A stretch of 64,000 nt of DNA from Gracilinanus agilis. Its lineage: Eukaryota. Position 1 is the first letter of the stretch; each line of letters starts with the position of its first letter. The position numbers and the translations under genes were made by a program. Under the pieces are notes generated by a model. That model made no database searches. It was given only the letters and a program-made list of their open reading frames with translations, and had not been told where the DNA came from. The stretch lies in NCBI RefSeq assembly GCF_016433145.1, contig NC_058131.1, positions 401,769,938 to 401,833,937 of the forward strand, in the 5' to 3' direction. This document shows, piece after piece, positions 7,815-61,400 of this stretch.

Positions 7815-7815
7815 N
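7815..7815. other. Single-N assembly gap joining two different genes
   Basis: n at 7815. Right flank is the end of gamma-A EC3 (DVNDNAP); left flank is a gamma-B signal peptide. Confidence 0.85.
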
Positions 7816-8851: not shown

Positions 8852-9070
8852 TGTTATCTTGCTGCAGTTATTTCTTCTTTTTACTCTTGTAGCAGTTCTG
8901 TCTGGATCAACTCTTGGGCCTTCCGCATTCATCACCACTTAATTAGCTTGGGAAGTTTGCTGGCCGATTCTGTTCCACAGATTCTTGTGTCTGTAGCGTT
9001 TTCTTTGTGCTCCTGAGCAATCCTTGGCTCTGTGGGTTGGAAGCCGGAAGGAATTGCTGGATTTCTCTCC

Positions 9071-10417: not shown

Positions 10418-11389
10418 TTTCACTTCATCTAATGGCTTTAAATAATTTTTTCACATATTTGTAAGGTCTTTTCATTTATTGATTCATCAGTGTTCATATC
10501 TAGAATGAATGGGGTGAGGTAGTTTCAACTCCACTCTTACAGTAGTAACAATATTTCTACATGCATCAATGGACTATCGAACTACTGAAAGATGGAAAAC
10601 TCTGAATTGATCAGTTTTGCATAATTGATATTAGTAATCATGATAACCTCTGTATGCAGGAAACAAGATTTTTTCACATCAAAGATCTGTGCATGGGGAA
10701 ATGCATTCATGTATGCAGAATTATTGGAATCTGGGATTTTGAATTAAGATATAGTAGGTACATTTCATGAATATTTTAATCAATGTCTCTAATTTGGACA
10801 AAGGCAATGCTTTGAGCAGAACATAAATAATTAGCAATTTATTCATTTGCCTTAGCAACTTAGTGATCATTATTTATGCAATAGCTTGATTTATAGATCC
10901 CATTAGCCCTTTAAACTACAACTAAGTTTTTCAAACAAGGAGCATATTTTTTAAATTAGTATGATAGAAAAAAAACCCTTTCTTAAAAAAAGCTTTACTA
11001 ACTGATGATTGTCAGTATCATTTTGCTTACTTAAAACCATGAAATAATCTGGTTGGAAAGTGCATATTTCTCATTTGATGATTCCAATAACTTAATTTCA
11101 TGGCAAATGTCAATGACCAAATATAAATAAAAGATTATGGAAGTTTATAGAAACTTTTTACTTTATACCCCAAATTGAGAAAGTATCACCAACTGGAATC
11201 AAGATATTTCAAGTATACATATTATTTGTTTACCAAGATAATGCTGTCTGATAAATTAGAGGAGATAGACAATATGAAAACAAAACCACAAATACTGAGA
11301 AATATAAGTTTAAGAATGAATGCGCAATGGAGTTGTTGCACAAAAAGGAAAAACAAAATAAAACAAACCAAGAGATTGCAAAAACTTAC

Positions 11390-16510: not shown

Positions 16511-16632
16511 CTGAAAAGAAGCCAACTGATCCTTATTTATACCAAGACATTCTGATAGTACTGGAGGTTCTTTTGGTTCACAACTCTGCTGACTTATCAA
16601 GGTGTCTGCATAGTTGGGCTGAGGAAAGATCA
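16511..16632 (-). CDS. PCDHGA: 3' end of a gamma-A variable exon (variable cytoplasmic region) left of the gap
   Basis: Reads IFPQPNYADTLISQQSCEPKEPPVLSECLGINKDQLASFQ, then donor CAG/GTGGGT at 16511. Confidence 0.85.
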
Positions 16633-16633
16633 N
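16633..16633. other. Single-N assembly gap inside gamma-A exon sequence
   Basis: n at 16633 joins the start of EC4 (NAPEVTITSV) directly to the cytoplasmic IFPQPNY segment. Confidence 0.85.
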
Positions 16634-17688
16634 ACAGAGGTGATAGTTACTTCTGGGGCATTGTCGTTCATGTCTACAACTGTGACATGAATTTTAGTTC
16701 TATTCTTAAAGCCAAGGCCGTCTTTAGCTTCTGCTTCCATCATATAGAATTTCGCATCTTCATAGTCCAGATTTTTTAAGGTTGTTAATTCTCCAGTCAC
16801 AGAATTCAATTCGAATATTTGTGAGGTCTTCCCAGGTATTTTCATTAGAAAATATCTCACTTGAGAATTGATTCCTTCATCTGCATCCGTAGCATTTACT
16901 GTGAGCAGTGCTGTCCCCTGGGGCACATTTTCAGGAACACTGACCGAATACACAGACTGGGTAAACACTGGTGCATTGTCATTTACATCCACAACAGTCA
17001 CTTGGATTCGAGCAGTGCCAGAGCGGATGGGTTCTCCCCCATCCAAAGCTGTGAGCGTCAGATAGTGAATAGCCTCCTCCTCCCGGTCCAGAGCCTGTTC
17101 TAGTATCAGCTCCGGATACTTCAACCCGTCGTCTCCACTTAGCACTCTCAGAGAGAAATGAGGATTGGGACTCAGTTCGTAGCCCTGGAGGGAATTCACT
17201 CCCACATCCGGATCATAAGCACTTTCCAGGCGATGCTGGCTTCCCGGGGGCGTGATTTCACTGATTTTTAATTCTTGATCCTCAGCTAAAAATCGAGGGG
17301 CGTTATCATTAATGTCGGTTATTTCTACCTCCACTGAATAAATTTTCAATTTATCCTCAATCAGAACATTAAAATTTAGCAGGCACTCGGTGCTCTGTGC
17401 GCATAGTTCTTCCCTGTCTATTCTGTCCCTGACGATTAAGCTTCCAGTTCTGATATTTATAGCGAAATTCTGCTTCTTACCTCTGGAGACAATTCGAGCC
17501 CCTCGCTCCGACAGTTCCCTTGGCTCCAGCCCCAAATCCTTGGCTATGTCACCTAAAAAGGATCCTTTTTCCAACTCCTCGGGAACCGAGTAGCGGATCT
17601 GGGCAACCGTGGTCTCCCATAGCTTTCCCAAGAGAAAACAAAACAGGACTCTCTGGATGCAGCCTCTATGTATTTGCGCAACGATCAT
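16634..17688 (-). CDS. PCDHGA: Protocadherin gamma-A type variable exon, 5' part (signal peptide, EC1-EC3), truncated by gap
   Basis: ORF 16630..17688 MIVAQIHRGCIQRVLFCFLLG..., three open EC repeats. The apparent TGA arises only across the N. Confidence 0.9.
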
Positions 17689-20713: not shown

Positions 20714-23055
20714 CTGAAAAAATGTTTGTTTATCTTTAACTTCAAGTAAAGACAGGGGTTGTAATGTTGACTTCTTATAGCTTTGTTGACTTAGAAGAGT
20801 ATCTGCATAGTTGGGCTGGGGAAAAATCAACTGTCTTTCCAGAGTCATTAGTAAGAGAAACTTCATGTGCATATGGAGAAAAGCTTGAACTCCATTGGTG
20901 CCCACAAATTGAAATGCAGGGATGCCCAAGAAATGGGTATCAAATGAACCCAAGAGCTGTGATCTTCTCCATTGATGAAGCCTGAGTGTCAGTAAGACAA
21001 TGATGAAGGTCCAAAAAAGCTCTTGCTACAACCAAATAGAGTGTGATGTTAGCACTTTCTAGAATACCAAGAGCTTCCTGGCTGGTGAGATCTGAGAGGA
21101 TCTCAGGGATGCTGTCAGCCACTGTCACAGTGACACTGATGGCGGCAAAGAGGGGAGGCTCCCCATTATCTGTCACTGCCACAAGGAGATTCTGCTTGAG
21201 GCATCTTTGTCCAGTAATGCCCAGGCAGGCCTAATCTCCTCTGAGTGCAGGCCCACAGAGAAGAGCCCTTTGAGAAGGCTCTGTGGCCTTGAGCAGATGA
21301 TGATAGGACAGTTAGGCATTCTGATCTGAATCTCACTGCCACCACCTTGGTCACCAGATAGCCTGGTTCTGCAGAGCATTGGGCTAGTTCCACTCCACTT
21401 GAACCATCTATGGAGAAGGCAGGATATAGGATCTCTGGAATATTGTCATTCTGATCCAGGATAAACAGAGTCAGGGACACATTGCTGTTGAAAGGAGGGT
21501 CCTCAGAATCCCTTGCTGTCATTCTCAGCTAAAGCTCCAGGGACTATTCATAGTCAAAGGAGCACAGAGCATAGAGTATATCTGTCTCTGAATTAATAGA
21601 GACATAGGAAGAAAGAGATGACCCCTGGAGATTGTCCTCTGAGATGGAGTGGCTTGGGTGTTATCCTCCTGGTGGGAATCCAATGCCATCACTGAATAGA
21701 CTCCTCTAGAATTATTCACTTGAATGTAGGCAGAGTAAGATGACTAACCAAAAGTGAGTGAGTTGTCATTAATGCCACCTATATTCAGTGAAAGATGAGT
21801 ATAAGTTACTATTGATGAAGTCCCTCAGTCTATGACAGTCATGTGAAGTTTGTACAATGAGATCTGTTCTCTGTGCAGGGCCCTATCTGTCTGCAAACTA
21901 ATAATTATCTCTTTTTTTCATTTAAAGGGCAGATTCTCTGGAACTGAACAGGTGATTCTCTGGAACTGAACATTAAAAAAGGAATTAACAGCCCTCGGAA
22001 GAGAGTTTTCTGGTATTGAACTGATGAGAGAAGTGATGGACACTACTGGTTACAACAACACATTGTTATTTATATCCACAACAGTGATCAGGACCTTTTA
22101 TTTGAACATTAAACCAGCTTTCTCTTGTACTTGAATTTCCAAGTTATAAAACTTTCTTCAAAATACAAGACAATTTTCTTTCTTATTTTCCCTCTATGAG
22201 AGTGCAAATGGAAGGTTTGCTTTCCTTTTGATGTTCCTAAAGGAATAGGTCACCTCCCCATTCCTCCCTCATCTGAGTCTTTGGCATTCATCATGAGTAG
22301 CGATGTTCCCACAGGCACATTCTCGGAGACACTAATGCTGTACACAGACTAAGTGAACACTGGTGTGTTGTCACTGAAATCAAGGACAGTCACTCGATTG
22401 TGCCCAATGTCAGGGCGGACCGGATCTCCTTCATCTGAAGCTGTAAGTGTAAGATAGTGAACAGGCTCCTCCTCCCTGTCCAGGGGCATTTCCAGCACCA
22501 GCTCTGGGTACTTGACTTCGTTATTTCCTCTCTGCATATGCAGAAAGAAGTGTTGGTTCGGACTCAGCTGGTAGCTGGGCACTGAATTCACACCCACATC
22601 TTCGTCCTGTGCGGAAGGCAGAGGGTAGAATGGAGTGGGTTTTTTTCGCCATTAATTTTGAAGAGCAGGTGCTCTGACCCAAACGAGGAGCGTTGTCATT
22701 AATGTCTTAGATTTCTGTTTATACAGGGTAACGTTTGAACTTATCCTCAATCAGGCATTAAATTCAGCAGGCACTGGCCGTTCTGAGCGCAAAGCTCCTC
22801 CCTTGCCTATTCTGTGTAGGGTCACTAAAGCTTCACCTTAAGTTCAGAGAGAAATGCTTCTTACCTCTGGAGATGATTCAAGCTTTGAGCTCTGACAGTT
22901 CCTGAGGCTCCAGCCTTTGGCGAAGTCACCCACAAAAGAGCTCTTTTCCATTTCCTCAGGCACCGAGAAGCAGAAATGGCCTCCCACAGAATCGCCAGGA
23001 GAAAGCAAAGCAAGACTGACCCTCGGTAATACCGTCGCCCGTGCCCAGCAGCCAT
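20714..23055 (-). pseudogene. PCDHGA: Protocadherin gamma-A pseudogene (full-length variable exon, multiple frameshifts)
   Basis: Broken ORF pieces cover the signal peptide ([21 protein letters not shown]), EC1, EC2, EC5-6, TM and the IFPQPNYAD tail. First frameshift is at the signal-peptide/EC1 junction. Donor CAG/GTAAAC at 20714. Confidence 0.92.
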
Positions 23056-29817: not shown

Positions 29818-32800
29818 CTTCCAGTAAATTCTGAGATGGTGAAAGTGGTCTGTTTTTCTTACTTTTTTTCTTTTTTTGCATAGGAACCTTGGATGAAGAA
29901 GAACTAGTTCTTCCCAGAGCCTGAAGTGAGAGTAACCTCTTGAGTATATGTCTAGAGAAAAGCTTGGACTCCATTAGTGTCAACAAATTCTGAGTCGGGA
30001 ACACCAACAAAATGATTAGTGCCTAACCTCAGCAGCTTTGAAGCCCTCCACTTGCACTTTCTTTTTTTCTTTTTAATTTTATTTAATTAATTAATTTTGA
30101 ACATTTTCCCATGGTTATAGGATTCAGATTCTATCCCTCCCCTCCTCCCATCCCCTCCCATAGCCAATGCACAATTCCACTGGGTTTACATGTGTTATTG
30201 ATCAAGACCTATTTCCATATTATTGATATTTGCACTAGGGTGCTCATTTTGAGTACATATCCCTAATTATATTCCCATCCTCCCATGTGATCAGGCAGTT
30301 ATTTTCTTTTGTGTTTCTACTCCTACAGTTCTTCCTCTGAATGTGAATAGCTTTCTTTCTCATAGGTCCCTCATAGTTGTCCTGGATCATTGCATTGTTG
30401 CTAGTAGAGAAGTCTATTACATTCGATTTTACCACAGTGTATCAGTTTCTGTGTATAATGTGTTACTGGTTCTGCTCCTTTCACTCTGCATCAATTCCTG
30501 GATGTGATTCCAGTTCATGTGGAATTCCTCCAGTTCATTATTCCTTTGAGTACAATAGTATTCCATCACCAACAGATATCACAGTTTGTTCAGCCATTCC
30601 CCAATTGACAGGCATACCCTCATTTCCAGTTTTTTGCCACCACAAAGAGTGCAGCTATAAATATTTTTGTACAAATCTTTTTCCTTATGATCTCTTTGGG
30701 GTATAAGCCCAGCAGTGGTATGGCTGGATCAAAGGACAGGCAGTCTTTTGGCACTCTTTGGGCATAGTTCCAAATTGCCATCCAGAGTGGTTGGATCAGT
30801 TCATAACTCTACCAGCAATGCATTAATGTCCCAATTTTGCCACAGCCCCTCCAACATTTATTAATTTCCTTTGCTGTCATTTTAGCCAATCTGCTAGGTG
30901 CGAGGTGGCACCTCAGAGTTGTTTTGATTTGCATTTCTCTAATTATTAGAGATTTAGAGCACTTTTTCACTTGCTTATTGATAGTTTTGATTTCTTTATC
31001 TGAAAATTGCCTATTCATGTCCCTTGCCCATTTGTTAATTCCCACCTGCACATTCTGAGCACTAGCAAGACACCCACGAAGCCAAAGAACAGGCAGGACT
31101 AGGCAGCCAAAGACAGGACCAGATAGAATGTGAGACTGCATTCACTGGAGACTTCAGGGACAGTCAGGCCATTAAGATCTGAGAGGACTTTGGGGACAGT
31201 GTCAGCTACAGCCATTGTGATACTAACAGTGGCAGAGGGAAGACATTCCACTTTCTATGATTGGTAAGATTCTGTTTTAAGGAATCTTTTCTTAGGAAGT
31301 TTTGAGCAGTCCTGATTTCTCCTCTGTTCAGGCCCACAGAAAAGAGGCCTGATTCTGTGGCCCTGAGTAGATAGTAGAACAGTTAGGCTTTCTGGCTAGA
31401 ATCTCTATCCACCATCACCACCTTGGTCACTAGGTAGCCTGGCTATGCAGAGCTAGAAGCCATTTCTAATCCTATGGAGCCATTTGTGGGAAAGGCCGGG
31501 TACAAGATTTCTGGGGCATTGCCATTTTGATCCAGGACTAAAAGAGTCAGAGATACATTGCTACCAAGAGGTGGGTCCCCAGCATATTGGGCAATCACAA
31601 ACAGGAGAAAGTCCTTAAGTGTTTATAATTGAAGGAGTGCAGAGCACAGAGAACGGCAGCGTTAGAGTTGAAGGAAATGTAAAAGGAGAGAGGTGCTACC
31701 TGAAGAATGTCTTCGGCAATGGAGTAAGGGAAACAGCCATTCTCTTCTCTGAGTCTCTGACGATCACCGAATGGATAGAAGCATTTCTGGGGTTGTTTTC
31801 TCGGATGTACTTGTAGTAGAATGCCTTACCGAAGGTAGATGGGTGGTCGTTAATGTCTACTACACTCAGTAAATGTGGGTGCACAGGGGCAAAATCCCTT
31901 GGTGTATAACTGTCATCCTGACGTATGTGAGGAATTTCTCTCTGTCCAGGGCTTCAATTGGTATCAATTTAGGATGATTTCCACAAGATTTTATAAGTTT
32001 AGAAGGCAAATTCTTGGATATGGAGCACATCACATCCATTCTCTCCAGATTCCCGGCATACATATTTAAAAGGGTAATGATAGATCCTGGGAAAGTGTCT
32101 TCAGAGACTGACCTCATGAGAGATGTTATACTCTCTTCAGGAGTGTTGTCGTTTATGTTTGAGACAGAAACCATAACTTTAGCTTTCCCCCAGGAGCCTT
32201 GGTTTGTACTTCCACCTCATATAGGATAGATTCTTCATAGTCTAGATTTTCTGACTTTGATATTTCACCTGTAAAAGTATTCATTTGGAAGATCTTTGAA
32301 GTTCTTTCAGCCATTTTCCTGAAAGAGTACGTCACTTCTCCATTGAATTCCTCATCTCGGTGGCGGTCCTTGCAAGTAGCCACGTTCTCACAGGAATGTT
32401 CTCAGGAACATTTATGCTATAAACAGACCAAGTATACACTGGAGCATTGTCATTGAAATCAAAGACAGTTACGAGAATGTGCACCATGTCAAAGAGGATA
32501 GGATCTCCCCCATCCGAGGCTGTGAGAGACAGTTCCTCCTCATGGTCCAAGGCCCGTTCCAGCAACAGTTCTGGGTACTCAACCTCATCTGTTTAGCTTT
32601 GTACAGAAAGAGAGAAGTGATGGTTTGGCTTCACTTGATGGCTCTGAACTGAATTCACACAGTCATCTGAGTCAATTTGAATTTCACTGACTTTTACTTT
32701 TGTTTCCTCAATTCCACATCCACTCCATAAAATCTTCATTTTTCCTCCAGAAGGATGTCCATTCAAATTCAAAAGACATTTTGGGGCTGCGAAACAAAGC

Positions 32801-33082
32801 TCTTCCCGGTCTATTCTGTCTGCACTGACTAAGCTGCCACTTCTGAAATTGAGAACAAAGCGCTGTATCTTAACTTCTGGAGACAGTTTGGGCTCAATTT
32901 TCCAAAAGCTCACGGGGCTCCAGACCCAGGTCCTTGGCGATGTAGGCCACAAAAGAATCCTTCTCCATTTCCTCCAGCATGGACAAGCGGATCTGTGAGG
33001 CGCAAGATTCCGACAGAATACCTAGGACAAAGTAAAGCAGGACTTGCCCTCTGCATCCATGGATCGTCTCTACAACAGTCAT
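29818..33082 (-). pseudogene. PCDHGA: Protocadherin gamma-A pseudogene, frameshifted and split by an L1 insertion
   Basis: Pieces include MTVVETIHGCRGQVLLYFVLG...[52 protein letters not shown] and a TM up to 31042. After the L1 it resumes with KWRASKLL...NGVQAFL*TYTQEV. Probable donor AAG/GTAAAA at 29818. Confidence 0.9.
30061..31041 (-). mobile_element. 5'-truncated LINE-1 (ORF2 C-terminus, 3' UTR, A tail)
   Basis: INKWARDMNRQFS...MQIKTTLR..HCW is L1 ORF2 C-terminal sequence. Flanked by an imperfect 13-bp TSD (ccacttgcacttt 30048-30060 / ccacctgcacatt 31042-31054). Confidence 0.92.
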
Positions 33083-34567: not shown

Positions 34568-36920
34568 CTCTTGAACAGTATGTTTCACAGAAAGCCTTAT
34601 TATTCTGCACAAATAGTAGACTTGGAATGTCATTGTAAAGGACATGGTCGACTTCTTGACTCATACATCTGGATTTCAATAAGTTTAATTCTATCTTTCC
34701 AAGACTTGAAATCACATATAAATTGTAGAGATAAGCCATAGTACCTTCACTGTGATTTGAGAGAACTCTGGGTTCAGACCTGGAGCAAAGATGTCCCAGG
34801 AAACAGCCCAAAACCTTGGAATTAAGTCTTTCCAAAAGAGCTGGACTACCATGCTTGGTTACAGCCCTTGTCTAAGTGATAAGAAACAAAGCTGAGATTA
34901 GGTCCAGCTTTGGCAAAACTGCAACTGAAGATGAGGGCCCCAAACAGTTAAGGAATCACCCTTCATCTCAGGCAGTGTATCTTGCAGGCTATCCACAAAA
35001 ACCACTTACAGAGACAGTGGTGGAAAGGGGGGAGTAGTGCTATTCTGTACAGAGACTAGACCACGGTGCCTAGCTGGAAAGTTCTCATGGACCTGCCCTC
35101 ATCTGTTCAGCCCCAGCTGAAAAGTCCTGGATCTACAGTGCCCAATAGGCCAGTTAGGAATTTTGTTCCAATGCTGAGTCCACCGCTATCATGGTGAAAA
35201 CTAAGTAGTGAGACTCCACTGGAGCGAGAGACTGTTGAAGAGAGTCAAGCCATCAAGACTCAGGGAGCAATAAAGGATCTTGGGGCATTGTCATTGTGGT
35301 CAATAAGGAACACTTGCCCAGTGACACTGGCTCAGAAAGAAGGAGAGACTGCATCACTGGCTCCTAGAATTCAGTCAAAGATTCAGGCTTGGTCATAGCT
35401 GAAAAAGTGCTGTTCAAAAATGACTGGGTTATGGTCATTGACAGCTAAGCCTGAGCCAAGTGAGAGAATGATGGAACAGAACACTTGACAATTCCTTTCC
35501 AGGTCCGGGATACATGCGATGGAAACTCCAAATGGGTTATTCTCGGTATGTAAACAACATAGTAAGTTTAGAGGAAAATAGGGTGATTGTTACTGATCAG
35601 AGATTTACAGGAATAGGATTTTGCTGGAAGACAAATGAGGCTTTTACTTACCAGTGGCAGTCACAATGATGTTATAACCTGGAGTCTCTTCTATTCTCTG
35701 TTACCAATTAGCAATAGATGTTAGAGAATGGAACAATTTTCACTGAGAAATGTCTCTGTAAATAAAGCACTTGGCTATTTCCTTTGGAATCCTTGTCATG
35801 CACACTGTTGAGCACTATCACTGTTCAGAGGTCAGACTCATTGTGTATATGTGATCTGGGAGACATTACCATTGTGTATATGTGATTTGGGGGGCATTAC
35901 CATTCTCATACAGGATTTCTAGAAGAACTTTACATTGAGTCACCTGACCTACATCATCTTTACTTTGGATATTCAGATTTTAGTTTCTTCAAAATCCAAT
36001 CCTCCTTTTTGTGCTATTTCTTCAGGAACAATATAGAGACTGAAAAGGTATTGTGAAGTCTCTTGAACACTTCTGAAGTGTCCTGAAACGCTTCCATGGG
36101 TTCCTCCTTCAGGTCCGTGGTAATCACACACAGCAAAGAGGATCTCAGGGGAAGGTTCTTCCTTAGACTGAGTCTACAGAAGTCCTGGGATGTCTACTAG
36201 GACATTATCATTGGCGTCCACTACAGTGATCCTGATCTAAGCGGTGCAGTTTAGGCCTGGGTCTCTCCCATCCACTCCTGTGAGGACCAAGTGATAGATA
36301 TTCTGCTGTTCCTGTCCAAAGACTTCTCCAAAATTAATTCCGGTTGTTTACTGACATTGCAGATTTACTGACCTTTTGCAGGTTCAGGTAGGAAAACTCA
36401 TTAAGATCAAGACTGTAACTTTGGACTGAATTGTTACTAGGAGATAGATCTTCAGCTGGTTCTCGAGGAAATCTTGCAAACAGAATTAAGGATTCTAATT
36501 CTTTCTTATTCTTGTCATTTTGGTTGAGAACAGGAAAGCGATCGTTGATATCCTGTATTTCCACAGTCACGTGGAAAATAGGGGAAAAAAAGTTTTCGAC
36601 CACCATTAGGAAATTAAGAAGCAAAACGATAATTTCCCGCATATCGTCTCAATCTAATCTATCCTTTACATAAATGCATTCTTTACATACGCGGTAAAAA
36701 AAAAAAAAAAATCTTTTTTGATTCCGGAGAGTAGTCTGATCTTCCGAGCCTCCAGCCCCAGATCCTTCACCAGCATTCCCATGATTTATCTTTTCTCCAA
36801 CTCCTCTGGAATCGAGCAACTGCAGTGGTTGGAAAGCCTGTGCCATAAAGAGGACGCCGAGAACGGAAACAGCACCCGAGGCCTTATTGTCGTAACCCTC
36901 TGCTCCGCGTTGCTCCCCAG
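34568..36920 (-). pseudogene. PCDHGB: Protocadherin gamma-B pseudogene
   Basis: Signal region LGSNAEQRVTTIRPRVLF aligns to MERSAEQK but starts with CTG at 36920-36918. Other pieces: IPEELEKR*, FHVTVEIQDINDRFP, SKVLGCF...EGTMAYLYNL. Many stops and indels. Candidate donor GAG/GTGAGC at 34568. Confidence 0.88.
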
Positions 36921-41499: not shown

Positions 41500-43460
41500 T
41501 TCTGTTAAATATATAGTGCAAACCTGAACATGATGAATATTTTGGCAAAATGGATGAAAATTTTGGGGTAGTGAATGTAATGAGATCCTCAGAGTTCTTG
41601 GCTTATGTTCTTTACTGCAATTCTCAAAATTATTCATAATCAAAAGAGGTTAAAATATAGAAGACACTGGACTCTGGGTTGATAAAGATGTGTAAAGAGA
41701 GAAGCATATCCAGCATGGACTTCATGATGTAGATGTTCTCCCACTCAAGACCTGTTACCTTCACAGAACAAAAATAGCCATTCCTTGTGAATTATTTTCA
41801 AGGACTTTGGCCATATAGGACTTCTCCAGAAATATAGGTCCAATATCACTCCTATAAGTAATCATTAGGCATATTATACTTGCTGCTGAGAAATTGTGTT
41901 TCCCTTGGTCTGTAGCTGTCATGGTTATATTGCAGTCTTAGATGAGTTCTTTGTTCAAAGCACTGTCAGTAATTAAACTGCAATAATTGTCAAAGGATTT
42001 TTGAAGTTAGGTTGAAGAGTGACTTGGAGATGAATTAGGTAACCTGAACACTTCTCCGTAAATATTAATTCTCTATATGAAAGAGAAAAATTACTGTCCC
42101 AATGTCTTCTGGGACTGAGTGGGAACAGGAAGCCATTTTAACTTCGGTAATATTATTTTCACCTGAGATTTCCAGAAGGATCTTGGACCTGACAGATAAT
42201 TCTCTGTAGCCAATCAACTTAATGGCAATTCATAGATTTGAGATAATTCAAAGATAATTTTGCCAGTCACTCTGACCTTTCTAGTTGGAGAATTTATGTA
42301 ACATATTTTTGATTTCTCCTTTCTATGAGGGAATAATTTTTGCATATGAACATTCATCATCAGCTTCAAAAAGTTTTCAACAATCTAAGATTTATAAATA
42401 GTTTGGTTACAAACAGGAGTTTTGAATTAGCATCCAGAAGAAAAATTTGGATTTTCTCAGTAGGGGGATTTCACTTTCATTCTTTGAAGTTAAGACCAGA
42501 TGGTGTATAGTCTTGCTCTTGCTCCAAAGACTTGACCTCCTGTCCCCCAAATTCTACATTTCACTCTCTCAATGGCAATACATTTATTTCCAGTGAGAAC
42601 AGTTACAGAACTGATCATCTAGGGATATGAATGGAAAGAAATTAATTGTCATATTTGGAATTTGTTCCTCATTGAGAGAAAACTGGAATCTTGGTAATGT
42701 CATCTCACTGGGCTCTTTAGGCTCTACTCCTGACTCTTCAAGATCTCTGTCTACACAATGCTTCAGTGACTTTCTCAAATTGGAAGATTCCTCTGACTCT
42801 GTGGCTTTTTCCTTTGATTGATCAGTTTCTCTCAGAACTTCCATTGTAAATAAGGACTCAAGATAGCCATGTTCGCTGTTCTGTTCTTCTCCAGGGCTGC
42901 ACACCTGACGCTTTGCCTGTGTTCCTTCTTCCTCCTATTCTATACTTTTTATTTTCATATATTGCCTTTTTTCATTACAATATAAACTCCTTGAGGGCAG
43001 CGCCCTCCTCTCCTCTTGCATTTGTATTCCCAGGACTTAATAAATGCGTTGTTCAATAATATCTTCATTTTGTAGAAAGTGAGAACATTATCATTTATAT
43101 CCAGAATATACCCCTCTGCTTGGTAAAGCTTTATTGAATTCTAGTAATAATTTACAAATTCCAAAAGACACTAGGGATTATTTGTACATACCTAATCTCC
43201 AGCTATCTTTTCATTCATACGCAAAATACCATTTTTAACATTAAGAGAGAAATTCTGAGTCTTACACTGGAAGACAACATGGACTCCATGTTCCACCAGC
43301 ATGAAGGGTTTCACCTCCAGGTCCCTGGTGATATCACTCACAAAAATATCCTCCATCTTCTTGGATGTTAAATAACACATCTTCATGATTCTGGGCTCTC
43401 ACCATATTCCCAGAGAAAGCAAAGCAGGACTCATGCTTATCATTGCTGTTGCTGCAGTGG
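41500..43460 (-). pseudogene. Highly degraded protocadherin gamma relic (signal peptide to EC5), interrupted by old repeats
   Basis: Signal-peptide motif cccagagaaagcaaagcaggact near 43410; EC1 DITRDLEVKP..GVHVV..QNFSLNVKNG; IKLYQAEGYILDINDN; IHHLVLT; LDAN..PV; KSFDNYCSLITDSAL..NITMTATDQG; FINPESSVFYI; DYE*F*ELQ. Confidence 0.75.
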
Positions 43461-53890: not shown

Positions 53891-54924
53891 GCATTAGTTA
53901 TATAATAATTATTATTATCATTATTGTTTATAATATATAGGACTCATATGTGAGGCTTTTTCTTGAGAAAGAAGTCTTTCCTGGAAATAGGAAACTTGTT
54001 CTGATTGAAAGGTGAAGAAAATATGATTCCTTTCACTAAACCTGCCCCATTCAGTAATCCATTCTTTTGTGTAGCAATACAGGTGCACAGGAAGAGGATA
54101 ATAGTATAAAAAGGAGGAAATATTAAACTTAAAGTGAAGCTATAATATTCATTCTCTAAACTTAATCAGGCTGGCAGCAGTTTTTGGCTAGTACAATGAA
54201 AGTGAAGATAGTCACTAGGTCGTGGTTCATCTCCTTCAGTTTCTTCTATGAATGTCTTCTCTGTCAGAGAGACATTCACTTGAGCCTTTTTAATACTAAA
54301 CCATGTGCATTTCCTGATTGATGAGGACTGCAGGTAAAAGACGGAGCAGGTCAAAAGTTTAAAGGCTAACATATCTCTAGCAACTTGAAACCAGTATGGT
54401 AGTGAGTAAATTGAAGAAACCAGCCTTTTTGACAGACATCTTATCAAATCTGCCAATATAAGAAGCCAACTATTTCAAAAAATCCTTCCCCCCTCTTTAA
54501 AGCCTTAGATTAAAGGGCACTAAAACTGCAGATCAGAAAACTTACCCTTGCCAGACATATTTAAGTATTATTTGTCATAATTTTGGGACAAAAAGGAAAG
54601 AGGTTTTCTATTATCCCTTTTTGTCATGTTAATGGTGGTGCCTCTACATACTCACAGTAATTCAATTTGGTAATGACAAATTGAGTGTCTACTCTCTACT
54701 TGGACCATAGTGCTATTTTGGCCACTAGTGCTTCTAATAACTTGTTGATTTTGATATATTGAAGTTTGCAGAACACAATGGGATTGGGGACCCAAGACCA
54801 AATTATATGTATAAGCAGTGAATGTGATTGTATTGTTGTAATACTCTACATACCTTTATGGGTACTCAGGATTTAGTGGTCCCATAGTAGAAAAAGTACC
54901 CAATGATGTACCCAAGCTCTAGGG

Positions 54925-55131: not shown

Positions 55132-55790
55132 CTCTAGGGTATGAATACAGTCTCTGCCACTTACTAGATATATAACTATATGATGTTAAATTTCAATGTT
55201 GTAAACTTCAGTTTTCCTATTTTTAAAAGGCATTAACATTATCCATTACTACCTATATCACTGACATACGTGGAGAGTGCTTTGAAAAACCTTAAAATGT
55301 TATATAAATATGAATTGTTCTTTAAAAATGGAACCAATATCATATTCTGTGTCTACCTCAGAGAAGTAGCTTCAAATGATATCACAAATGTAAATAAATT
55401 ATAATTGTAATTATTGTCATTGTAGTGGTCCATGAATAACTAATTGTTGGTTATGATGATTGTCACCCTAGAAACAAATTTTGCTAAATCCTGTCTTTGA
55501 AGTTTTCCTTTAACAACTTTTTTATACCCAACATGACATAAAGAAGTAAAGACTTTTGTCTACCTAAAAATATTTTACATTAAACTTCTAAAGTAGAGAA
55601 AAGAAATTTAATATAATGCAGACCATTACCTTATTTCTTCATAAATGCCCCTCTTTAAACTATTTTATGGTTAAATTAAACACATGGATCAACAGAACAT
55701 AGCTTTATAAGGGAATACTTTCATACTAGTAGGCAAACATGCTAAGATATTCAAATTCCTAAAATTAAAATTGTAAAAGAAGATTCCCAC

Positions 55791-58205
55791 CTTAATGAAT
55801 GCTTGCTCTTCATTTGCTTTGTTGCAGGCATCCCAAGATATAATAGATTCTCTCTGTTCAGATCCTTGCTTACTAGTAAATTCTTGTGAATTACTTGCTG
55901 AAAAATTTAAATGGCTCTTCCTGGAATTGATAGTACAGGAAACCTCGTGTGAATATGCCTGAAGAAATGCTTGTACTCCATCTATCCCCAGAAACTGTGA
56001 AGTTTGAATACCCTCCAAATGTGTACTTGTTGATCCCAGCTCCATACACCACTTTCGAAGCCTGAGTGCCAATAATAGGATAATGAAGGAAAAGAATAAG
56101 CAGGACTCTGCAGCTACTGCAATCACCAGGTAGAATGTGAGACTGGAGTCATTTGGGGATTCAGGTGTCACTAGGTTGCTGAGATCTGAAAGGATCTCAG
56201 GGATGCTGTCAGCCACTGCAATTGTAACACTGATAGTGGCAGAGAGAGGAGGGTCCCCATTGTCTGTGACAGCTACTACCAGAGTTTGTTTGATGGAATC
56301 TTTTTCCAGGAAAGCTCTGGTAGTAGTTATCTCACCTGTGTGTAATCTCATTGCGAAGAGCCCAGGCTCTGTGGCCTTGAGTATATGGTAGGACAGCCAG
56401 GCATTCTGACCAGAGTCTGCATCCACTGCCATCACCTTGGTCACCAGGTAGCCTGACTCTGCAGAGCGTGGGGCCAGCTCCACTCCGCTAGAACTATCTG
56501 AGGGGAAGGCAGGGTACAGGATTTCTGGGGCGTTGTCATTCTGATCTAGGATGAAAAGAGTCAGAGACACATTGCTGCTGAGAGGAGGGTCCCCAGAATC
56601 CCTGGCTGTCACTCTCAGCTGAAGCTCCGGGAACTGTTCATAGTCAAAGGAGCGCAGAGCATACAGGACACCGGTCTCAGAGTTGATCGAAATATAGGAA
56701 GAGAGAGGAGATCCCTGGAAAGTCTCATTGATAATTGAATAAGTAAGTTGGGCATTCGCTTCCGTGTCTGCATCACTTGCCTTGGGAGAAGATATTGTAG
56801 CTCCAGGCGAATTGTTTTCCATTAGATAAGCCAAATAGTGACTTCGGTGGAATAATGGGGGGTTGTCATTTTTATCAGATACCTGCAGTTGTATCACTTG
56901 GCTTGATGTTAGGGGTGGATCCCCTCTGTCTTCCGCGGTAATAGTAATATTGTAGCTGGAAATTTGCTCCCTGTCCAGGATTTCGCTGGATATCAAACTG
57001 TAATAGTTATCAAATGAACCCGAAATCTCGAAGGGAACTTGCTTGGAAATCGTGCACCGGATCTGTCCATTTTCTCCAGAATCTCTGTCATGGGTGTTAA
57101 AAAGGGCAATTATCGTCCTTAGTGGAGAGTCTTCTGGGATTGGACTGAAGAGGGAAGTGATAGTGATTTCTGGGGAATTGTCATTGACATCGGTCACTCG
57201 AAGTAGAATGTGGGCCAGGGCAAAAAGTCCTCCTCTGTCAATAGCCTGCACTTCAAGCTCATGTAACTGATCGGCCTCGAAATCCAGGCCTCCCACTATT
57301 CTGAGCTCTCCACTGGTGGACCCGATATGGAACAGCAAGGAAGAAGCCTCAGAGAGCTTTATTAACGAATAAGTTATCTCGGAGTTGGAACCTTCATCAC
57401 GGTCGGTGGCCTGCACCTTGACCACCACTGTGTCCGCTTGCACATCCTCAGGCACGCTCACCTCATAGAGAGAGCGCTGAAATATGGGAGCGTTGTCATT
57501 CACATCTAATACTTTGATTCGGATCTGAGTCTCTCCGGTTCTCACTGGATCCCCACCGTCTACAGCTATGAGGAGAAGCTGGTGTTCAGCTTGCTCCTCT
57601 CGATCCAGAGATTTTTCCAACACCAGCTCCGCATATTTTGTACCCCCAGCTTTAGTATGCACATTGAGGCTGAAATATGCGCTCTGACTAAGTAGGTAAT
57701 TCTGGAGACTATTACTGCCTACATCTGGATCCTTTGCATCCTGGAGATGAAAGCGGGTTCCTGGAGTAGTTATTTCTCTGATCTCTAACAAAATTTCCTC
57801 GGCAGGGAAGCTGGGCGAATTATCATTTATATCTAGAATTTCCACTTCAGCACGAACCAGCTTTATTGGCTCCTCCATAAGAACCTGGAGGGTCATCAGA
57901 CACCGAGGGATTTGTCCACATACTTCCTCTCTGTCTATTTTCTCACTGACATACAAACGACCATTTTGTAAATTCAGAGTGAAATGCTGCTTTTTACCTC
58001 CAGAGGCTATGCGAGCTCCTCGCTCCCACAGTTCCCGTGGCTGCAGCCCCAGATCCTTTGAGATGTCGCCCACAAAAGAGCCCTTCTCCATCTCCTCCGG
58101 AACCTCATAGCGGAACTGCCCGCATCCGGCCTGGCACAGAGTCCCCAAGAGAAAACAAAGAAGGACTTGCCCTCTGCAGTCTCGGAGCCTCGGTCCAGCA
58201 CCCAT
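55791..58205 (-). CDS. PCDHG: Protocadherin gamma variable exon, intact, atypical (gamma-A-like ends, divergent EC1-EC5 core)
   Basis: ORF 55689..58205 has six EC repeats, TM and GIDGVQAFLQAYSHEVS. Phase-0 donor AAG/GTGGGA ends the exon at 55791 (2415 nt, 805 codons). Confidence 0.92.
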
Positions 58206-58430
58206 TTTCCTCTTCAGGAGGAACCACTTCTTGTTTTTGGTGAAGATATGCCGTTATTTTCCCGCTTTTGTTTTCGTTTCTAGGCTCCAATGATCGATCC
58301 TGGGCATAAGGGTCTAACTTAACTGTAGTCACTCTGCTCTTATACATTCAAGTTATATTGTTTAAGGTCAATGTTGTTCTATCAGTAAAATTCAGGAGAA
58401 TATCTCTTGGTGTCTGAGTTTTCAGACTTT

Positions 58431-58460
58431 GGTAGAATAGCGGCACCCAGAGTCTTTGCT
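58431..58460 (-). promoter_or_regulatory. Pcdh promoter CSE
   Basis: ggtagaatagcggcacccagagtc, about 230 bp upstream of ATG 58205; nearly identical in core to the CSE at 9081. Confidence 0.8.
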
Positions 58461-61400
58461 GACAATGGCAAGGCATTAAGTTAAGTTGCTATATTGATTT
58501 GCATCTTCTGGTGATGATTCTTAATCCATTCTTTCTCGCTCATTCAACATGAATCCAAAAGCATTTATTAAATGGCCACTGTATTCAGAGGTGTGGGCAA
58601 AGCTTAGATAACATAATATCTATGGCTTCTTCAAGTTCCCGCTAGCAGGTGTGTAAGACACAACTGCTATAACTGTAATACACAATATTACTAGATAAAG
58701 ACTTTAAAGAGGTGTAGAACAGAGTACTATATGGGAGCAAGGGACGTTGTTATAGATCAGTCAGGTTTTAAAATTGTATTTGGGGGTTTGCTTTTTTTGG
58801 TTGTTTTTTTTTAACGTTTTTTAATTTAATTTTGATACAGCAGTCATATGAAGTGGAAAAAGTAGTTAGGACACTGTGCTTAGACTACTGTGCTTGGAGA
58901 TAGGAAGGTCTGGGCTAACATCCTGCCGCTGTATGATCCAGAGTCAGTTAATCTTTGTGAAGTTCAGGACTCTATCTCAGTCTCTCTGTTTTGTCACTGT
59001 CTCTGTCTCTGCCTATTTGTCTGTTTGTTCCTCTTTCTCCTCTTCATCCATCCCTCACTCTTGTTATTATTTGACCAAAAGTTCTTCATTCCTCTGGAAA
59101 ATTCAACCTACATTGATTTAGACGTTTGTTGACAAGAAACTTGAATTAAGTAGTATTCTGAACCTTCAAAAATGCTTATTTGCATTATAAAAAATACTTA
59201 TTTAGGCCAGGTGAAGTAAAAGCAGAGAACCCTATTTCTTTAATGTGAGATAACATGTTCTCCAAGAATCATCTTTATCCATCAATACTTTTATGGTTTA
59301 TGGTTTGCTTCATTGATTCTGTCACTGTTTATGCTATCACTGCCTTCTATCAATGCTTATTCGCATAATAAAATATTGTACTTGCTCTCAAGCATTAGTT
59401 TATCTCTGAGATAAGATTGAGAGAGAATTGAAAATGAATTGCAACAATATGATTAATCTTATTTATATATACTGTTTCTGTTTTTTCAAAAACTATTTTT
59501 AAAACTCTAAGACACCATCTCTGGGTCTCCCTGCTATCATTTTCCTTGACTCTCCTTGCCATTTTATGAAAGAAATCTGTTTCTCCATTGAGTTTAATTT
59601 TGAGCTTGGAAAAGATCTGCCATAGAAGGAGTTCGAATTATTTATGTAGATATGAAATGTAAGAATAAAAAATTAATATCCAATACTCCAAGAATTATTA
59701 TTTATAAGATTTATTAATAATCACTTGAAGTAAAGGAATAAAATAGCCTGAGTAAAGAGGAGTTTACCCAGACTGCATTAGCAGGAGAAAAGAGAGAAAG
59801 GGCAGAGTTACAGAAAGTTTTATCTATACAGTGTAAGGAAGTAAGGTGGGGATGAAAGGAAAGGGATTCTGGTAGATGAAGTCCAAGGGCACAAAATTCT
59901 AGTTACATTATATATATATATTGAACTAAATCATCAAAAAAAGAAATTATTTGGATGATTCTTTTTGTGTATACACCCAAAAATAATATAATGTAAGGAA
60001 ATATTATTATATTAAGGATAATTAAAATGAGTACTGGGAATCAGCAAGAAGGCATAGTAGCATGATAGATTGATGCAGGGCCTTTGGAAATGTCTGGGAT
60101 AGGAATGAGTAAAAGTCACTAAAACACACAAAAGAAGGAATTAAATAAATGGAGGACTATATATTAAGGAATTCTAGATAGTAGATCCAAAATGAATAAA
60201 TAGTGCATTCCATAGAATATTTTACAAGAAATAAGAACCAGAAAAGAACATCTGGGATAAATATCAAGATAATTTTTGCAAGACAGAAACAGCAGAAAGA
60301 GAGGAAAGACGAATTAGACATGTCAGTGACTGAGGTCAACATAATCTCTGAATTGTTTCTTTCTAAGCATAGAGACAGTATGGTAGAGTAGACAGAGAAC
60401 TGGACTCAAATCAAAAAGATCCTAAATTCAAGTCCATACTCTGTGACCTTGGCCAGCTCACTCCATTTCTCAGTTCTCTAAGACTCAAAATTGCAGAGAA
60501 GGTGTTGACCTGCATTGGTAGAGGGAGTTTCCATACCTAGAAGTTCTCTATAGAAACAAAATCACAAAATTAGTCCTTATGTTTATCTCTTTTTAACCTA
60601 AAACTAAGGAGAGACTAGAATCACAAAAGTAAGGAATACTATTCCCTCAGGGACTAGAAAGGATGGACTAATTAAGTAGTGTAATATACCTTCAGAATAT
60701 GAAGAATTCAGTGTTGTATAGTGTGGCCATAAAATATATAGTGTAAGCAGAAATGTGATCCAGGATGCAAGTGTTAAAGTATTAAGGACCACTCCACTTA
60801 GCTGAAGACAGGTGGCTGTTAATAAGTGAGACTTAGGGACTGTGTATTTTTCAGCTTTGTGCTCCTTGCCTTGAAAGAAAGGTGGTCGCTTTTGATCTGC
60901 TTTATTAATGTGAAAATGAAGCTATGGAACTGTGAGACAGATTCAACAACAATAGTTCTTTTACCTCAAGGTTTATTTTTGAATCAGAATTGTTTTTATT
61001 GGATCTGGTCTAAGCAGATGGGGGATGGGCTACCATAAGAAAATATAAAGACCACAGACTTTAATGGGGAAAAAAATCCCTTGGGAAGTATGAGCAAAGA
61101 GATTTGGATGTCCATTCATCAAGATAATCTTGGAACTGCTTAAGTTTACTCTTTTTCTTATATTTATAGTCACATGCCATCTGAAAAAAATTATGCAAGT
61201 TAGACGCTACCACAAGTTTCTGGTAACTACTGTGCTCCTTGACATTAGTCAAATAGGACTTCCCACACAAGTAAGAACTACTACTCTAGCCTCTCGCAAA
61301 GGGGAAGGGACTTATTTATGGCATGACCACCATTTTACAGGTCACCTGAGGGTAGAATAAATCAAGTTAGATTCTGCATCCTTTTTTAAAATAGCATGCT

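What the first reader, a model, noticed from the sequence alone, without database searches (positions are those of the whole stretch)
55791..58205. Intact gamma exon with a divergent recognition module (EC1-C-terminal to mid-EC5) between gamma-A-like ends: candidate unrecognised Pcdh-gamma subtype
Seen in sequence: the signal peptide and first ~35 aa of EC1 track the local gamma-A genes closely at DNA level (58001-58170 vs 8646-8815), as does everything from GSPLSSY in EC5 onward (56340-56715 vs 2220-2600 and 21240-21610). Between about 56720 and 57980 the protein departs from both local classes, e.g. CLMTLQVLMEEPIKLVRAEVEILDINDNSPSF vs [32 protein letters not shown], and LDFEADQLHELEVQAIDRGGL vs [21 protein letters not shown]. 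It has its own CSE and a phase-0 donor. Established: clustered Pcdh trans-homophilic recognition uses EC1-EC4 (specificity largely EC2/EC3), cis-dimerisation uses EC5-EC6, and gene conversion homogenises the 3' ECs. Inference: this is an ancient or lineage-specific clade whose ends were converted by gamma-A, giving a distinct recognition code on a gamma-A cis module. From memory the core motifs look more like Pcdh-beta or non-mammalian gamma exons than eutherian gamma-A.
Basis: partly seen in the sequence, partly recalled or inferred. Interest (0 to 1): 0.75.

Follow-up and report, generated by a model that had tools for sequence, protein, structure and literature searches.

The report
Ancient mosaic protocadherin-gamma exon in marsupials
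An intact exon of a neuronal cell-recognition gene (protocadherin-gamma) in a mouse opossum keeps an old recognition region that was found only in other marsupials and platypus. Its tail, and probably its start, were copied over from neighbouring gamma-A genes, so it is a real but modest addition to a well-known gene family.

Summary
Window 58205-55791 (minus strand) is an intact 805-codon clustered-protocadherin variable exon of Gracilinanus agilis. It has a signal peptide, six cadherin repeats, a membrane span, a promoter CSE and a phase-0 AAG|GT donor.

- **Mosaic.** Residues about 86-490 are 20-65% identical to local gamma-A genes, with saturated synonymous divergence. Residues about 491-720 are 68-87% identical, with dS 0.4-0.7.
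- **Core history.** Trees of the core and of EC2-3 join it to five other marsupial orthologues (85-88%) and one platypus gene (58%). This clade lies outside the mammalian gamma-A crown and outside the amniote gamma-A clade. Holding it with the crown gave AU p 0.028. Its branch is not long.
- **No eutherian partner.** No eutherian protein exceeds 52% identity in the core. The neighbouring gene at 1720-4101 is a plain gamma-A4 orthologue at 65-69%.
- **Tail history.** The 3' part groups by lineage instead (monotremes, eutherians, marsupials). The core topology is rejected there (AU p 0.0005), which is classic gene conversion.
- **5' tract.** Conversion there is suggestive only.
- **Selection.** dN/dS against Petaurus is 0.17.

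It is a deep gamma-A-type lineage, not beta-like, and already auto-annotated as "gamma-A10-like". Expression and binding specificity are untested. An unchecked note of this scan on adjacent DNA reports a beta-type relic just upstream.

The parts
55791..58205 (-). Complete Pcdh-gamma variable exon coding region (805 codons, ATG at 58205, last exon base 55791)
   Evidence: ORF and translation. Pfam Cadherin_2 plus 5 Cadherin repeats plus Cadherin_C_2. Identical to the RefSeq model P0006 of Gracilinanus agilis over this part. dN/dS 0.17 against the Petaurus orthologue.
58429..58454 (-). Promoter conserved sequence element (CSE) with CGCT core at 58439-58442, 237 nt upstream of the ATG
   Evidence: 16-nt match to the CSEs of the local gamma-A promoters. 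Conserved at -234 in Petaurus and -211 in platypus. The rest of the 400-nt upstream region is at background identity of about 55%.
58119..58205 (-). Signal peptide (residues 1-29)
   Evidence: Alignments to the mature chains of solved mouse Pcdh structures begin at residue 29-30. Hydrophobic LLCFLLGTL stretch in the translation.
57951..58205 (-). 5' tract (residues 1 to about 85) that resembles gamma-A genes more than the core does; possible short conversion tract
   Evidence: 76-79% DNA identity and dS 0.55-0.71 to the gamma-A exon start at about 8850. Four-fold sites 54-61% the same against 35-44% in the core, not significant. The platypus orthologue is 82-88% identical to its platypus neighbour here.
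56736..57950 (-). Divergent core: C-terminal part of EC1, EC2, EC3, EC4 and N-terminal part of EC5 (residues about 86-490)
   Evidence: 20-65% identical to marsupial gamma-A, 50-72% to platypus P0150, 78-95% to marsupial orthologues. dS saturated against local gamma-A genes. Trees place it outside the gamma-A crown.
56046..56735 (-). 3' homogenised tract: rest of EC5, EC6, membrane span (residues about 491-720)
   Evidence: 75-87% DNA identity and dS 0.4-0.7 to the gene at 1720-4101. Four-fold sites 63% against 35% the same, p 0.0004. The tree groups sequences by lineage. The core topology is rejected here, AU p 0.0005.
56064..56126 (-). Transmembrane segment (residues 694-714)
   Evidence: Best 21-residue hydrophobic window, at the same place as in the local gamma-A4 gene and in platypus P0150.
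55791..56045 (-). Variable cytoplasmic domain (residues 721-805)
   Evidence: Pfam Cadherin_C_2 at residues 688-769. 82-92% identical to marsupial orthologues and 20-58% to gamma-A genes.
55785..55790 (-). 5' splice donor GTGGGA after AAG, phase 0
   Evidence: Read from the sequence. The same AAG|GTGGG is present in Petaurus. The Dromiciops RefSeq model P0018 joins ...EEQAFVK to QAPPNTDW of the gamma constant region at exactly this point.

Best explanation
This is a working variable exon of the protocadherin-gamma cluster of the agile gracile opossum. It is the first intact exon downstream of the beta-type array.

**Origin.** Its recognition part (end of EC1 to the start of EC5) descends from a gamma-A-type gene that split off before the mammalian gamma-A genes radiated, and probably before the amniote gamma-A clade. 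That lineage was found only in marsupials and platypus. Eutherians appear to have lost it.

**Mosaic.** The rest of EC5, EC6 and the membrane span were homogenised with the other gamma-A exons of the lineage by gene conversion. The last event dates to about the marsupial common ancestor. The first 85 or so codons were probably homogenised too.

**Inferred working, by analogy with mouse and human clustered protocadherins.** A promoter with a CSE is chosen stochastically. The exon is spliced to the three gamma constant exons. EC1-EC4 make an antiparallel homophilic contact with a specificity of its own. EC5-EC6 let it form cis dimers with other isoforms. Expression and specificity were not shown here.
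For: **Species and annotation.** P0006, 'protocadherin gamma-A10-like' of Gracilinanus agilis, is 100% identical.

**Orthologues.** Vombatus, Dromiciops, Petaurus, Macrotis and Notamacropus carry orthologues at 85-88% in the core. Next come platypus P0150 (58-59%), caecilians (55-58%), turtles (54-55%) and coelacanth (54%). Eutherians reach at most 52%.

**Control.** The core of the neighbouring exon at 1720-4101 is 65-69% identical to eutherian gamma-A4 genes of many orders.

**Core tree (361 columns, IQ-TREE with C20).**
- X plus the marsupial orthologues: 100/100. Adding platypus: 97/96.
- The mammalian gamma-A crown (100/98) holds proteins named gamma-A1, A2, A4, A7 and A10, an echidna gene and the marsupial gamma-A genes. 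The amniote gamma-A clade (97/79) also excludes X.
- Holding X with the mammalian crown costs 36.5 lnL, AU p 0.028.
- The EC2-3 tree agrees: X plus platypus 99/96, and an amniote gamma-A clade at 95/92 that holds all three local gamma-A exons.
- Root-to-tip length is 0.67 for the X clade, against 0.84 for marsupial and 0.91 for eutherian gamma-A. A long branch is therefore an unlikely cause.

**3' tree.** Monotremes group together (98/94), eutherian gamma-A together (100/99), and marsupial gamma-A together with the X orthologues (97/91). The core grouping is rejected there, AU p 0.0005.

**Function.** dN/dS is 0.17 overall and 0.13-0.15 in the core over the opossum-glider split. All calcium-binding motifs are intact. 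The CSE and donor are conserved. The Dromiciops model is spliced to the gamma constant region.

**Synteny.** In platypus and Petaurus the gene just upstream of the orthologue is of the same non-gamma type, closest to a gecko protein. In platypus the order downstream is P0150, P0217, then a gamma-B gene. Our window shows a matching order: X, a relic closest to P0150/P0217, then a gamma-B-like relic.
Against: - The AU rejection of a place beside the gamma-A crown is modest (p 0.028), and the group was named after the tree was seen.
- The base of the gamma-A-type group is an unresolved polytomy, so the exact age of the lineage is open.
- My eutherian sample held proteins named gamma-A1, A2, A4, A7 and A10, plus solved mouse A1, A4, A8 and A9 by score only. 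Named A3, A5, A6, A11 and A12 were not in the trees.
- Absence in eutherians rests on ranked search lists, not on genome scans.
- Orthologues were listed for only five other marsupials. None was listed for Monodelphis, dasyurids, koala or possum, although their gamma-A4 genes were.
- No RNA run exists for this species.
- The RefSeq model of this species joins the exon to an odd exon at 54169-54336, not to the constant exons.
- 5' conversion is not statistically supported.
Confidence: 0.66

Rival explanations
1. It is an ordinary gamma-A paralogue that arose by duplication within mammals. Its EC1-EC4 then diverged quickly under diversifying selection, and the trees push it to the base by artefact.
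For: - The best solved-structure match of the core is still a gamma-A protein (mouse gamma-A9, 418 bits).
- The clade sits within the wider gamma-A-type group.
- The AU test is only p 0.028.
- Its ends are gamma-A-like.
Against: - The X clade is not long-branched: 0.67 against 0.84-0.91 for crown gamma-A genes.
- Two separate partitions give the same place with starred support for the excluding clades.
- The platypus orthologue breaks the branch.
- The core is under strong purifying selection now, dN/dS 0.13-0.15.
- Apart from gamma-A9 (418 bits), the core scores much the same against mouse gamma-B (349-372 bits) as against gamma-A8 and gamma-A1 (340-360 bits). The neighbouring gamma-A4 gene shows a margin of about 50-120 bits.
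Confidence: 0.2
2. Eutherians did not lose the lineage. Its positional counterpart (the first gamma exon, gamma-A1) is the orthologue, but the eutherian core was overwritten by conversion from other gamma-A genes or diverged beyond recognition.
For: - X and gamma-A1 both occupy the first place after the beta array (and established knowledge of the eutherian gene order).
- Conversion is active in this cluster.
Against: - The protein named gamma-A1 falls inside the crown with 100/98 support.
- Mouse gamma-A1 EC1-4 scores lower with the X core (340 bits) than gamma-A9, gamma-A8 or gamma-B2 do.
- Conversion in clustered protocadherins is known mainly for EC5, EC6 and the tail, not EC2-EC3 (PMC2764143).
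Confidence: 0.1
3. It is not a working gene: a pseudogene kept open by chance, or a chimera made by the assembler from two paralogues.
For: - There is no RNA evidence for this species.
- Several decayed Pcdh exons lie nearby.
- The RefSeq model has an odd 3' exon.
Against: - The 805 codons are open in six marsupial species, with dN/dS 0.17.
- The same mosaic is present in independent assemblies of five other marsupials.
- The CSE and donor are conserved.
Confidence: 0.03

Closest known systems
Mammalian protocadherin gamma-A isoforms (PCDHGA1-A12; solved examples mouse gamma-A9 5szn, gamma-A8 5szm, gamma-A1 5szl)
   Same: - Same exon architecture: signal peptide, six cadherin repeats, membrane span and a short variable tail in one exon.
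- CSE promoter, and a donor that joins the gamma constant exons.
- EC5 (C-terminal part), EC6 and the membrane span are gamma-A-type.
   Different: - EC1 (C-terminal part) to EC5 (N-terminal part) lie outside the mammalian gamma-A crown.
- Identity to any eutherian gamma-A is at most 52%, where a true orthologue pair in the same window shows 65-69%.
Platypus 'protocadherin gamma-A10-like' (P0150), first gamma exon after the beta-type array
   Same: - Sister of the marsupial clade in the core (97/96) and in EC2-3 (99/96).
- Same position in the cluster and a conserved CSE.
   Different: - Only 58% identical in the core.
- Its own ends are homogenised with platypus paralogues (82-95% to P0217), not with marsupial genes.
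Region-limited gene conversion in protocadherin clusters (synonymous divergence lower in ECD5-ECD6 within a paralogue subgroup; summarised in the green anole study, PMC2764143)
   Same: The 3' part groups by lineage and has much lower synonymous divergence than EC1-EC4.
   Different: Here the partners are not members of one recent subgroup. A much older lineage has been drawn into the gamma-A pool at its 3' end, and perhaps at its first 85 codons.
Protocadherin-beta genes
   Same: Neighbouring position (the beta-type array ends just upstream) and the same six-repeat ectodomain.
   Different: - X has a donor and a gamma-A-type tail.
- Its core is 42-46% identical to eutherian betas and scores lower with solved beta-6 and beta-8 than with gamma-A or gamma-B.
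- It does not join the betas in either tree.

Membership tests
Clustered protocadherin variable exon | One large exon that encodes a signal peptide, six extracellular cadherin repeats with calcium-binding linkers, one membrane span and a short cytoplasmic piece | tested here: met
   Pfam domains. Five DxNDNxP linkers, DRE and DxDxGxN motifs, and a membrane span at residues 694-714.
Clustered protocadherin variable exon | Own promoter with a CSE (CGCT core) about 200 nt upstream | tested here: met
   CSE at -237, conserved in Petaurus and platypus.
Pcdh-gamma cluster member | 5' donor at the exon end that is spliced to the gamma constant exons | tested here: inconclusive
   Phase-0 AAG|GTGGGA donor, conserved in Petaurus. 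The Dromiciops orthologue model is joined to QAPPNTDW of the constant region. No RNA data exist for this species, and its RefSeq model uses another exon.
Pcdh-gamma cluster member | Lies in the tandem array with gamma-A and gamma-B exons on the same strand | tested here: met
   Gamma-A and gamma-B exons and relics lie downstream on the minus strand.
Mammalian gamma-A subgroup (crown: A1-A12 and their marsupial and monotreme orthologues) | EC1-EC4 (specificity region) groups within the mammalian gamma-A clade | tested here: not met
   Excluded from the crown (100/98) in the core tree and from the amniote gamma-A clade (95/92) in the EC2-3 tree. AU p 0.028.
Mammalian gamma-A subgroup (crown: A1-A12 and their marsupial and monotreme orthologues) | Subgroup-type EC5-EC6, membrane span and proximal tail | tested here: met
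   Nested in the marsupial gamma-A clade, 97/91. 68-87% identical to the local gamma-A4 gene.
Mammalian gamma-A subgroup (crown: A1-A12 and their marsupial and monotreme orthologues) | One-to-one eutherian orthologue, as for most mammalian cluster genes | tested here: not met
   No eutherian protein above 52% in the core. The control gene reaches 65-69%. The test rests on ranked lists, not on genome scans.
Gamma-A-type total group (coelacanth plus tetrapods) | Groups with coelacanth and tetrapod gamma-A-like genes to the exclusion of gamma-B and C-type genes | tested here: inconclusive
   Met in the core tree (53 rows, 97/84, gamma-B apart at 100/100). Unresolved in the EC2-3 tree.
Pcdh-gamma-B subgroup | Ectodomain and tail group with gamma-B genes | tested here: not met
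   Gamma-B forms its own clade at 100/100. Tail identity to local gamma-B is 13-35%.
Pcdh-beta | No splice to constant exons; ectodomain groups with beta genes | tested here: not met
   Conserved donor. 42-46% identity to betas. Not with the betas in the trees.

The most novel reading that the evidence does not exclude
The exon and its platypus partner represent a separate, pre-amniote paralogue subgroup of the gamma cluster (a 'gamma-A0' at the beta-gamma boundary). Monotremes and marsupials kept it, and eutherians, and probably sauropsids, lost it. It would give non-eutherian mammals one homophilic specificity class that placentals lack. It would also be a natural case of an old recognition module carried on a freshly homogenised gamma-A cis-dimerisation and membrane module.
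Probability: 0.4. Interest if true: 0.5.

Novelty: new member of a known kind. Interest (0 to 1): 0.36.

Why it matters
Clustered protocadherins give neurons their surface identity. How the repertoire changes between lineages is usually described as lineage-specific duplication and decay of recent paralogues.

This case differs in two ways.
- It shows differential retention. An old gamma-A-type recognition lineage has been kept under strong purifying selection since marsupials diverged from one another. It has a platypus counterpart but no detectable placental one.
- It is a clean natural example of the modular logic of these proteins. EC1-EC4 keep their own history, while EC5-EC6 and the membrane span are pulled into the family pool by conversion. 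This fits the known split between trans recognition and cis dimerisation.

It would be a handy natural chimera for testing that split. It does not change the picture of how the family works, and the gene is already auto-annotated under a misleading name.

Tried and rejected
**Steps that gave nothing.**
- Search of protein representatives with the core. The best 150 were giant multi-cadherin or fused proteins with summed scores, so it says nothing about close kin.
- RNA evidence. Only one run holds the stretch, it is not on record as RNA, and it is probably the assembly's own sample.
- Read laying on 55600-58500. Later searches used 56856-57923, another gene, or the platypus protein. Local scripts on files already held were the only further use.
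- Synteny of a kiwi gene and a caecilian gene from the basal polytomy. One gave tandem duplicates and the other gave no neighbours within 10 kb.
- The first 182 residues of the 'gamma-A1' model of Fukomys, tested as a possible X-like relic. They are ordinary gamma-A.
- Four literature searches. They found no study of marsupial or monotreme protocadherin-gamma phylogeny. An Antechinus genome paper only counts gamma genes.

**Readings rejected.**
- Beta-like core.
- Pseudogene.
- Assembly chimera.
- Orthologue of gamma-A10, which is the name RefSeq gives it.

**Rules kept.** The N gap inside 5420-8938 was left as it is.
Full report
**What is there.** The window is part of the protocadherin-gamma cluster of the marsupial Gracilinanus agilis, with the genes on the minus strand.
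- A RefSeq protein of that species, 'protocadherin gamma-A10-like' (P0006), is identical to the finding's frame.
- The open frame runs from the ATG at 58205 to a stop at 55689.
- The exon itself ends at 55791, where AAG is followed by GTGGGA, a phase-0 donor.
- Pfam finds the N-terminal Cadherin_2 domain, five further cadherin repeats and the protocadherin cytoplasmic domain.
- All five DxNDNxP linkers, the DRE and DxDxGxN calcium motifs, the EC1 cysteine loop and one membrane span (residues 694-714) are present. They sit at the same positions as in the neighbouring gamma-A gene, so there are no indels.
- A CSE with its CGCT core lies 237 nt upstream. Its 16 nt up to and including the CGCT core match the CSE of a local gamma-A promoter, while the rest of the upstream 400 nt is at background identity.

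**Other exons in the window.**
- An intact gamma-A exon at 1720-4101. Its core is 65-69% identical to eutherian gamma-A4 of many orders and 82-90% to other marsupials, so it is a plain gamma-A4 orthologue.
- A gamma-B exon at 11222-13807.
- A gamma-A N-terminal half and a gamma-B exon run together across an N gap at 5420-8938.
- A truncated gamma-A exon at 16630-17688.
- Four decayed relics between 20.7 and 43.4 kb.
- Nothing protocadherin-like lies between 58206 and 64000.
- An unchecked note of this scan reports a beta-type relic 1.5 kb beyond the window's end.

**The mosaic is real.**
- Protein identity to the local gamma-A exons is 55-67% over residues 1-90. It is 28-60% over residues 61-510, lowest at 28-33% around residues 271-330, where gamma-A exons are 50-73% identical to each other. 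It is 68-87% over residues 481-720.
- In a codon alignment with the gamma-A4 gene, synonymous divergence is saturated (1.2 to infinite) between residues 51 and 500. It falls to 0.4-0.7 between 501 and 700, at 75-87% DNA identity.
- At four-fold degenerate sites the two genes agree at 35% of sites in the core and 63% in the 3' part (Fisher p 0.0004).
- At the 5' end the exon is 76-79% identical in DNA to the gamma-A exon that starts near 8850, with dS 0.55-0.71. With so few sites the contrast to the core is not significant (p 0.1-0.23).

**Who its relatives are.** Searching with the core alone (residues 95-480) gave a clear ranking.
- Orthologues at 85-88% in Vombatus, Dromiciops, Petaurus, Macrotis and Notamacropus.
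- Then a gap down to a platypus protein (P0150, 58-59%), caecilians (55-58%), turtles (54-55%) and coelacanth (54%).
- No eutherian protein exceeded 52%, and betas reached 42-46%.
- Against solved mouse structures the core scores 418 bits with gamma-A9. It scores 340-360 with gamma-A8 and gamma-A1, the same as with gamma-B2, B4 and B7 (349-372), and 324-329 with beta-6 and beta-8.
- The gamma-A4 gene next door shows a margin of about 50-120 bits for gamma-A over gamma-B. The platypus protein behaves like X.

**Trees.** I cut all retrieved proteins into variable-exon units with a profile, because many database entries are fused models. I aligned the units to that profile.
- *Core tree* (residues 110-470, 61 rows, IQ-TREE LG+C20):
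  - X joins its marsupial orthologues at 100/100, and platypus P0150 joins them at 97/96.
  - The mammalian gamma-A crown (100/98) holds proteins named gamma-A1, A2, A4, A7 and A10, an echidna gene and the marsupial gamma-A genes.
  - The amniote gamma-A clade has 97/79.
  - The X clade lies outside both. It sits in an unresolved polytomy at the base of a gamma-A-type group (97/84) with coelacanth, caecilian and some bird and turtle genes.
  - Gamma-B is apart at 100/100.
- *AU test.* Holding the X clade together with the mammalian crown costs 36.5 log-likelihood units (AU p 0.028). This is a modest rejection, and the group was named after the tree was seen.
- *EC2-EC3 tree* (214 columns). It gives the same answer: X plus platypus at 99/96, and an amniote gamma-A clade at 95/92 that holds all three local gamma-A exons.
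- *Branch length.* Root-to-tip length from the gamma-A-type node is 0.67 for the X clade and 0.68 for platypus P0150. It is 0.84 for marsupial and 0.91 for eutherian gamma-A genes. Fast evolution and long-branch attraction are therefore poor explanations.

**The ends have another history.**
- In a tree of residues 500-715 the sequences group by lineage. The platypus orthologue groups with its platypus neighbour and an echidna gamma-A gene (98/94). All eutherian gamma-A genes group together (100/99). All marsupial gamma-A genes group together with the X orthologues nested among them (97/91).
- Forcing the core grouping (X orthologues plus platypus) on this part is rejected (68.3 log-likelihood units, AU p 0.0005).
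- A window-by-window table shows the same in each species. Platypus P0150 is 82-88% identical to its neighbour P0217 over residues 1-60 and 85-95% over residues 500-760, but 45-68% in between. The Dromiciops orthologue is 95-100% identical to Dromiciops gamma-A4 over residues 501-580.
- This is the region-limited gene conversion long described for these clusters, where it is read from lower synonymous divergence in ECD5-ECD6 (PMC2764143).
- Synonymous divergence between X and the gamma-A4 gene in the 3' part (0.4-0.7) is close to that between the opossum and glider orthologues (0.41-0.45). The last exchange in this lineage therefore dates to about the marsupial common ancestor (inference).

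**Is it a working gene?**
- Against the Petaurus orthologue (locus L002), dN/dS is 0.17 overall. It is 0.13-0.15 in the core and in EC2-3, with an even dS of about 0.43.
- The CSE and the donor are conserved in Petaurus, and the CSE also in platypus.
- The Dromiciops RefSeq model joins the exon to the gamma constant region at exactly the predicted point, and that protein carries the Cadherin_tail domain.
- No RNA run exists for Gracilinanus.
- This species' own model joins the exon to a small exon at 54169-54336, which may be an annotation artefact or a short form.
- Expression is therefore inferred, not shown.

**Position.**
- In Petaurus and in platypus the gene just upstream of the orthologue is of one and the same non-gamma type, closest to a gecko protein.
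- In platypus the order is that type, P0150, P0217, then a gamma-B exon.
- In our window the order is X, a relic closest to P0150/P0217/X (43374-41585), a gamma-B-like relic (36900-34674), then gamma-A pseudogenes.
- The exon thus holds the first place of the gamma array in monotreme and marsupial alike, which supports orthology.

**Reading.** I take the exon to be a functional gamma isoform with two parts of different age.
- Its recognition part belongs to a deep gamma-A-type lineage, retained in marsupials and platypus and not detectable in eutherians.
- Its cis-dimerisation and membrane part was drawn into the gamma-A pool by conversion.
- How it works is inferred from mouse and human work: stochastic promoter choice, splicing to the constant exons, trans homophilic binding by EC1-EC4, and cis pairing by EC5-EC6.
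- Confidence is about two-thirds. The main rival is a mammal-born gamma-A paralogue that is misplaced in the trees.
- The gene is already annotated under a misleading name. Turnover of paralogues is the rule in this family. I found no paper on marsupial or monotreme gamma phylogeny.
- I therefore rate it a new member of a known kind, of moderate interest.

Noticed in passing
window 5420-8938 (minus strand): The 1172-codon 'ORF' is an artefact. The N-terminal half (EC1-EC3) of a gamma-A exon runs across a two-letter N gap into a complete gamma-B exon. The gap was left as it is.
   Followed up: partly
window 16630-17688 (minus strand): This gamma-A exon ends with a stop after EC3, and no EC4 to membrane-span part lies downstream. 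It is a truncated exon and probably a pseudogene. In the EC2-3 tree it sits on a long branch (0.49) inside the gamma-A crown.
   Followed up: partly
window 41585-43374, 34674-36900, 31000-33064, 20762-23055 (minus strand): Four decayed protocadherin exons. The first is closest to platypus P0150/P0217 and to X (207, 199 and 180 bits against 130 for gamma-A4). The second is gamma-B-like and the last two are gamma-A-like. The order mirrors platypus: P0150, P0217, gamma-B.
   Followed up: partly
window 54169-54336 (minus strand): The RefSeq model of this species (P0006, 858 aa) joins the exon to a small exon here, about 1.45 kb downstream of the donor, and not to the gamma constant exons. It could be an annotation artefact or a short form.
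   Followed up: no
window 1720-4101 (minus strand): This exon is a clear orthologue of eutherian PCDHGA4. Its core is 65-69% identical to gamma-A4 of elephants, rodents, bats, whales and primates, and 82-90% to marsupials.
   Followed up: yes
L001 18457-20919 (platypus, P0217): The platypus neighbour of the X-like gene also falls outside the mammalian gamma-A crown, on a long branch (0.66-0.71), and no marsupial orthologue was seen among intact genes. It may be a second old lineage at the 5' end of the gamma array.
   Followed up: no
Dromiciops proteins P0018 and P0231: The Dromiciops orthologue of X is 95-100% identical to Dromiciops gamma-A4 over residues 501-580. This points to a more recent conversion in that species.
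   Followed up: no
trees: Eutherian beta genes joined the protein named gamma-A1 inside the gamma-A crown in the core tree (100/99, very long branch of about 2.1). They stood alone at the base in the EC2-3 tree. Their place is unstable in this data set.
   Followed up: no
Nothing was laid, and the places were kept out of all later searches.
   Followed up: no
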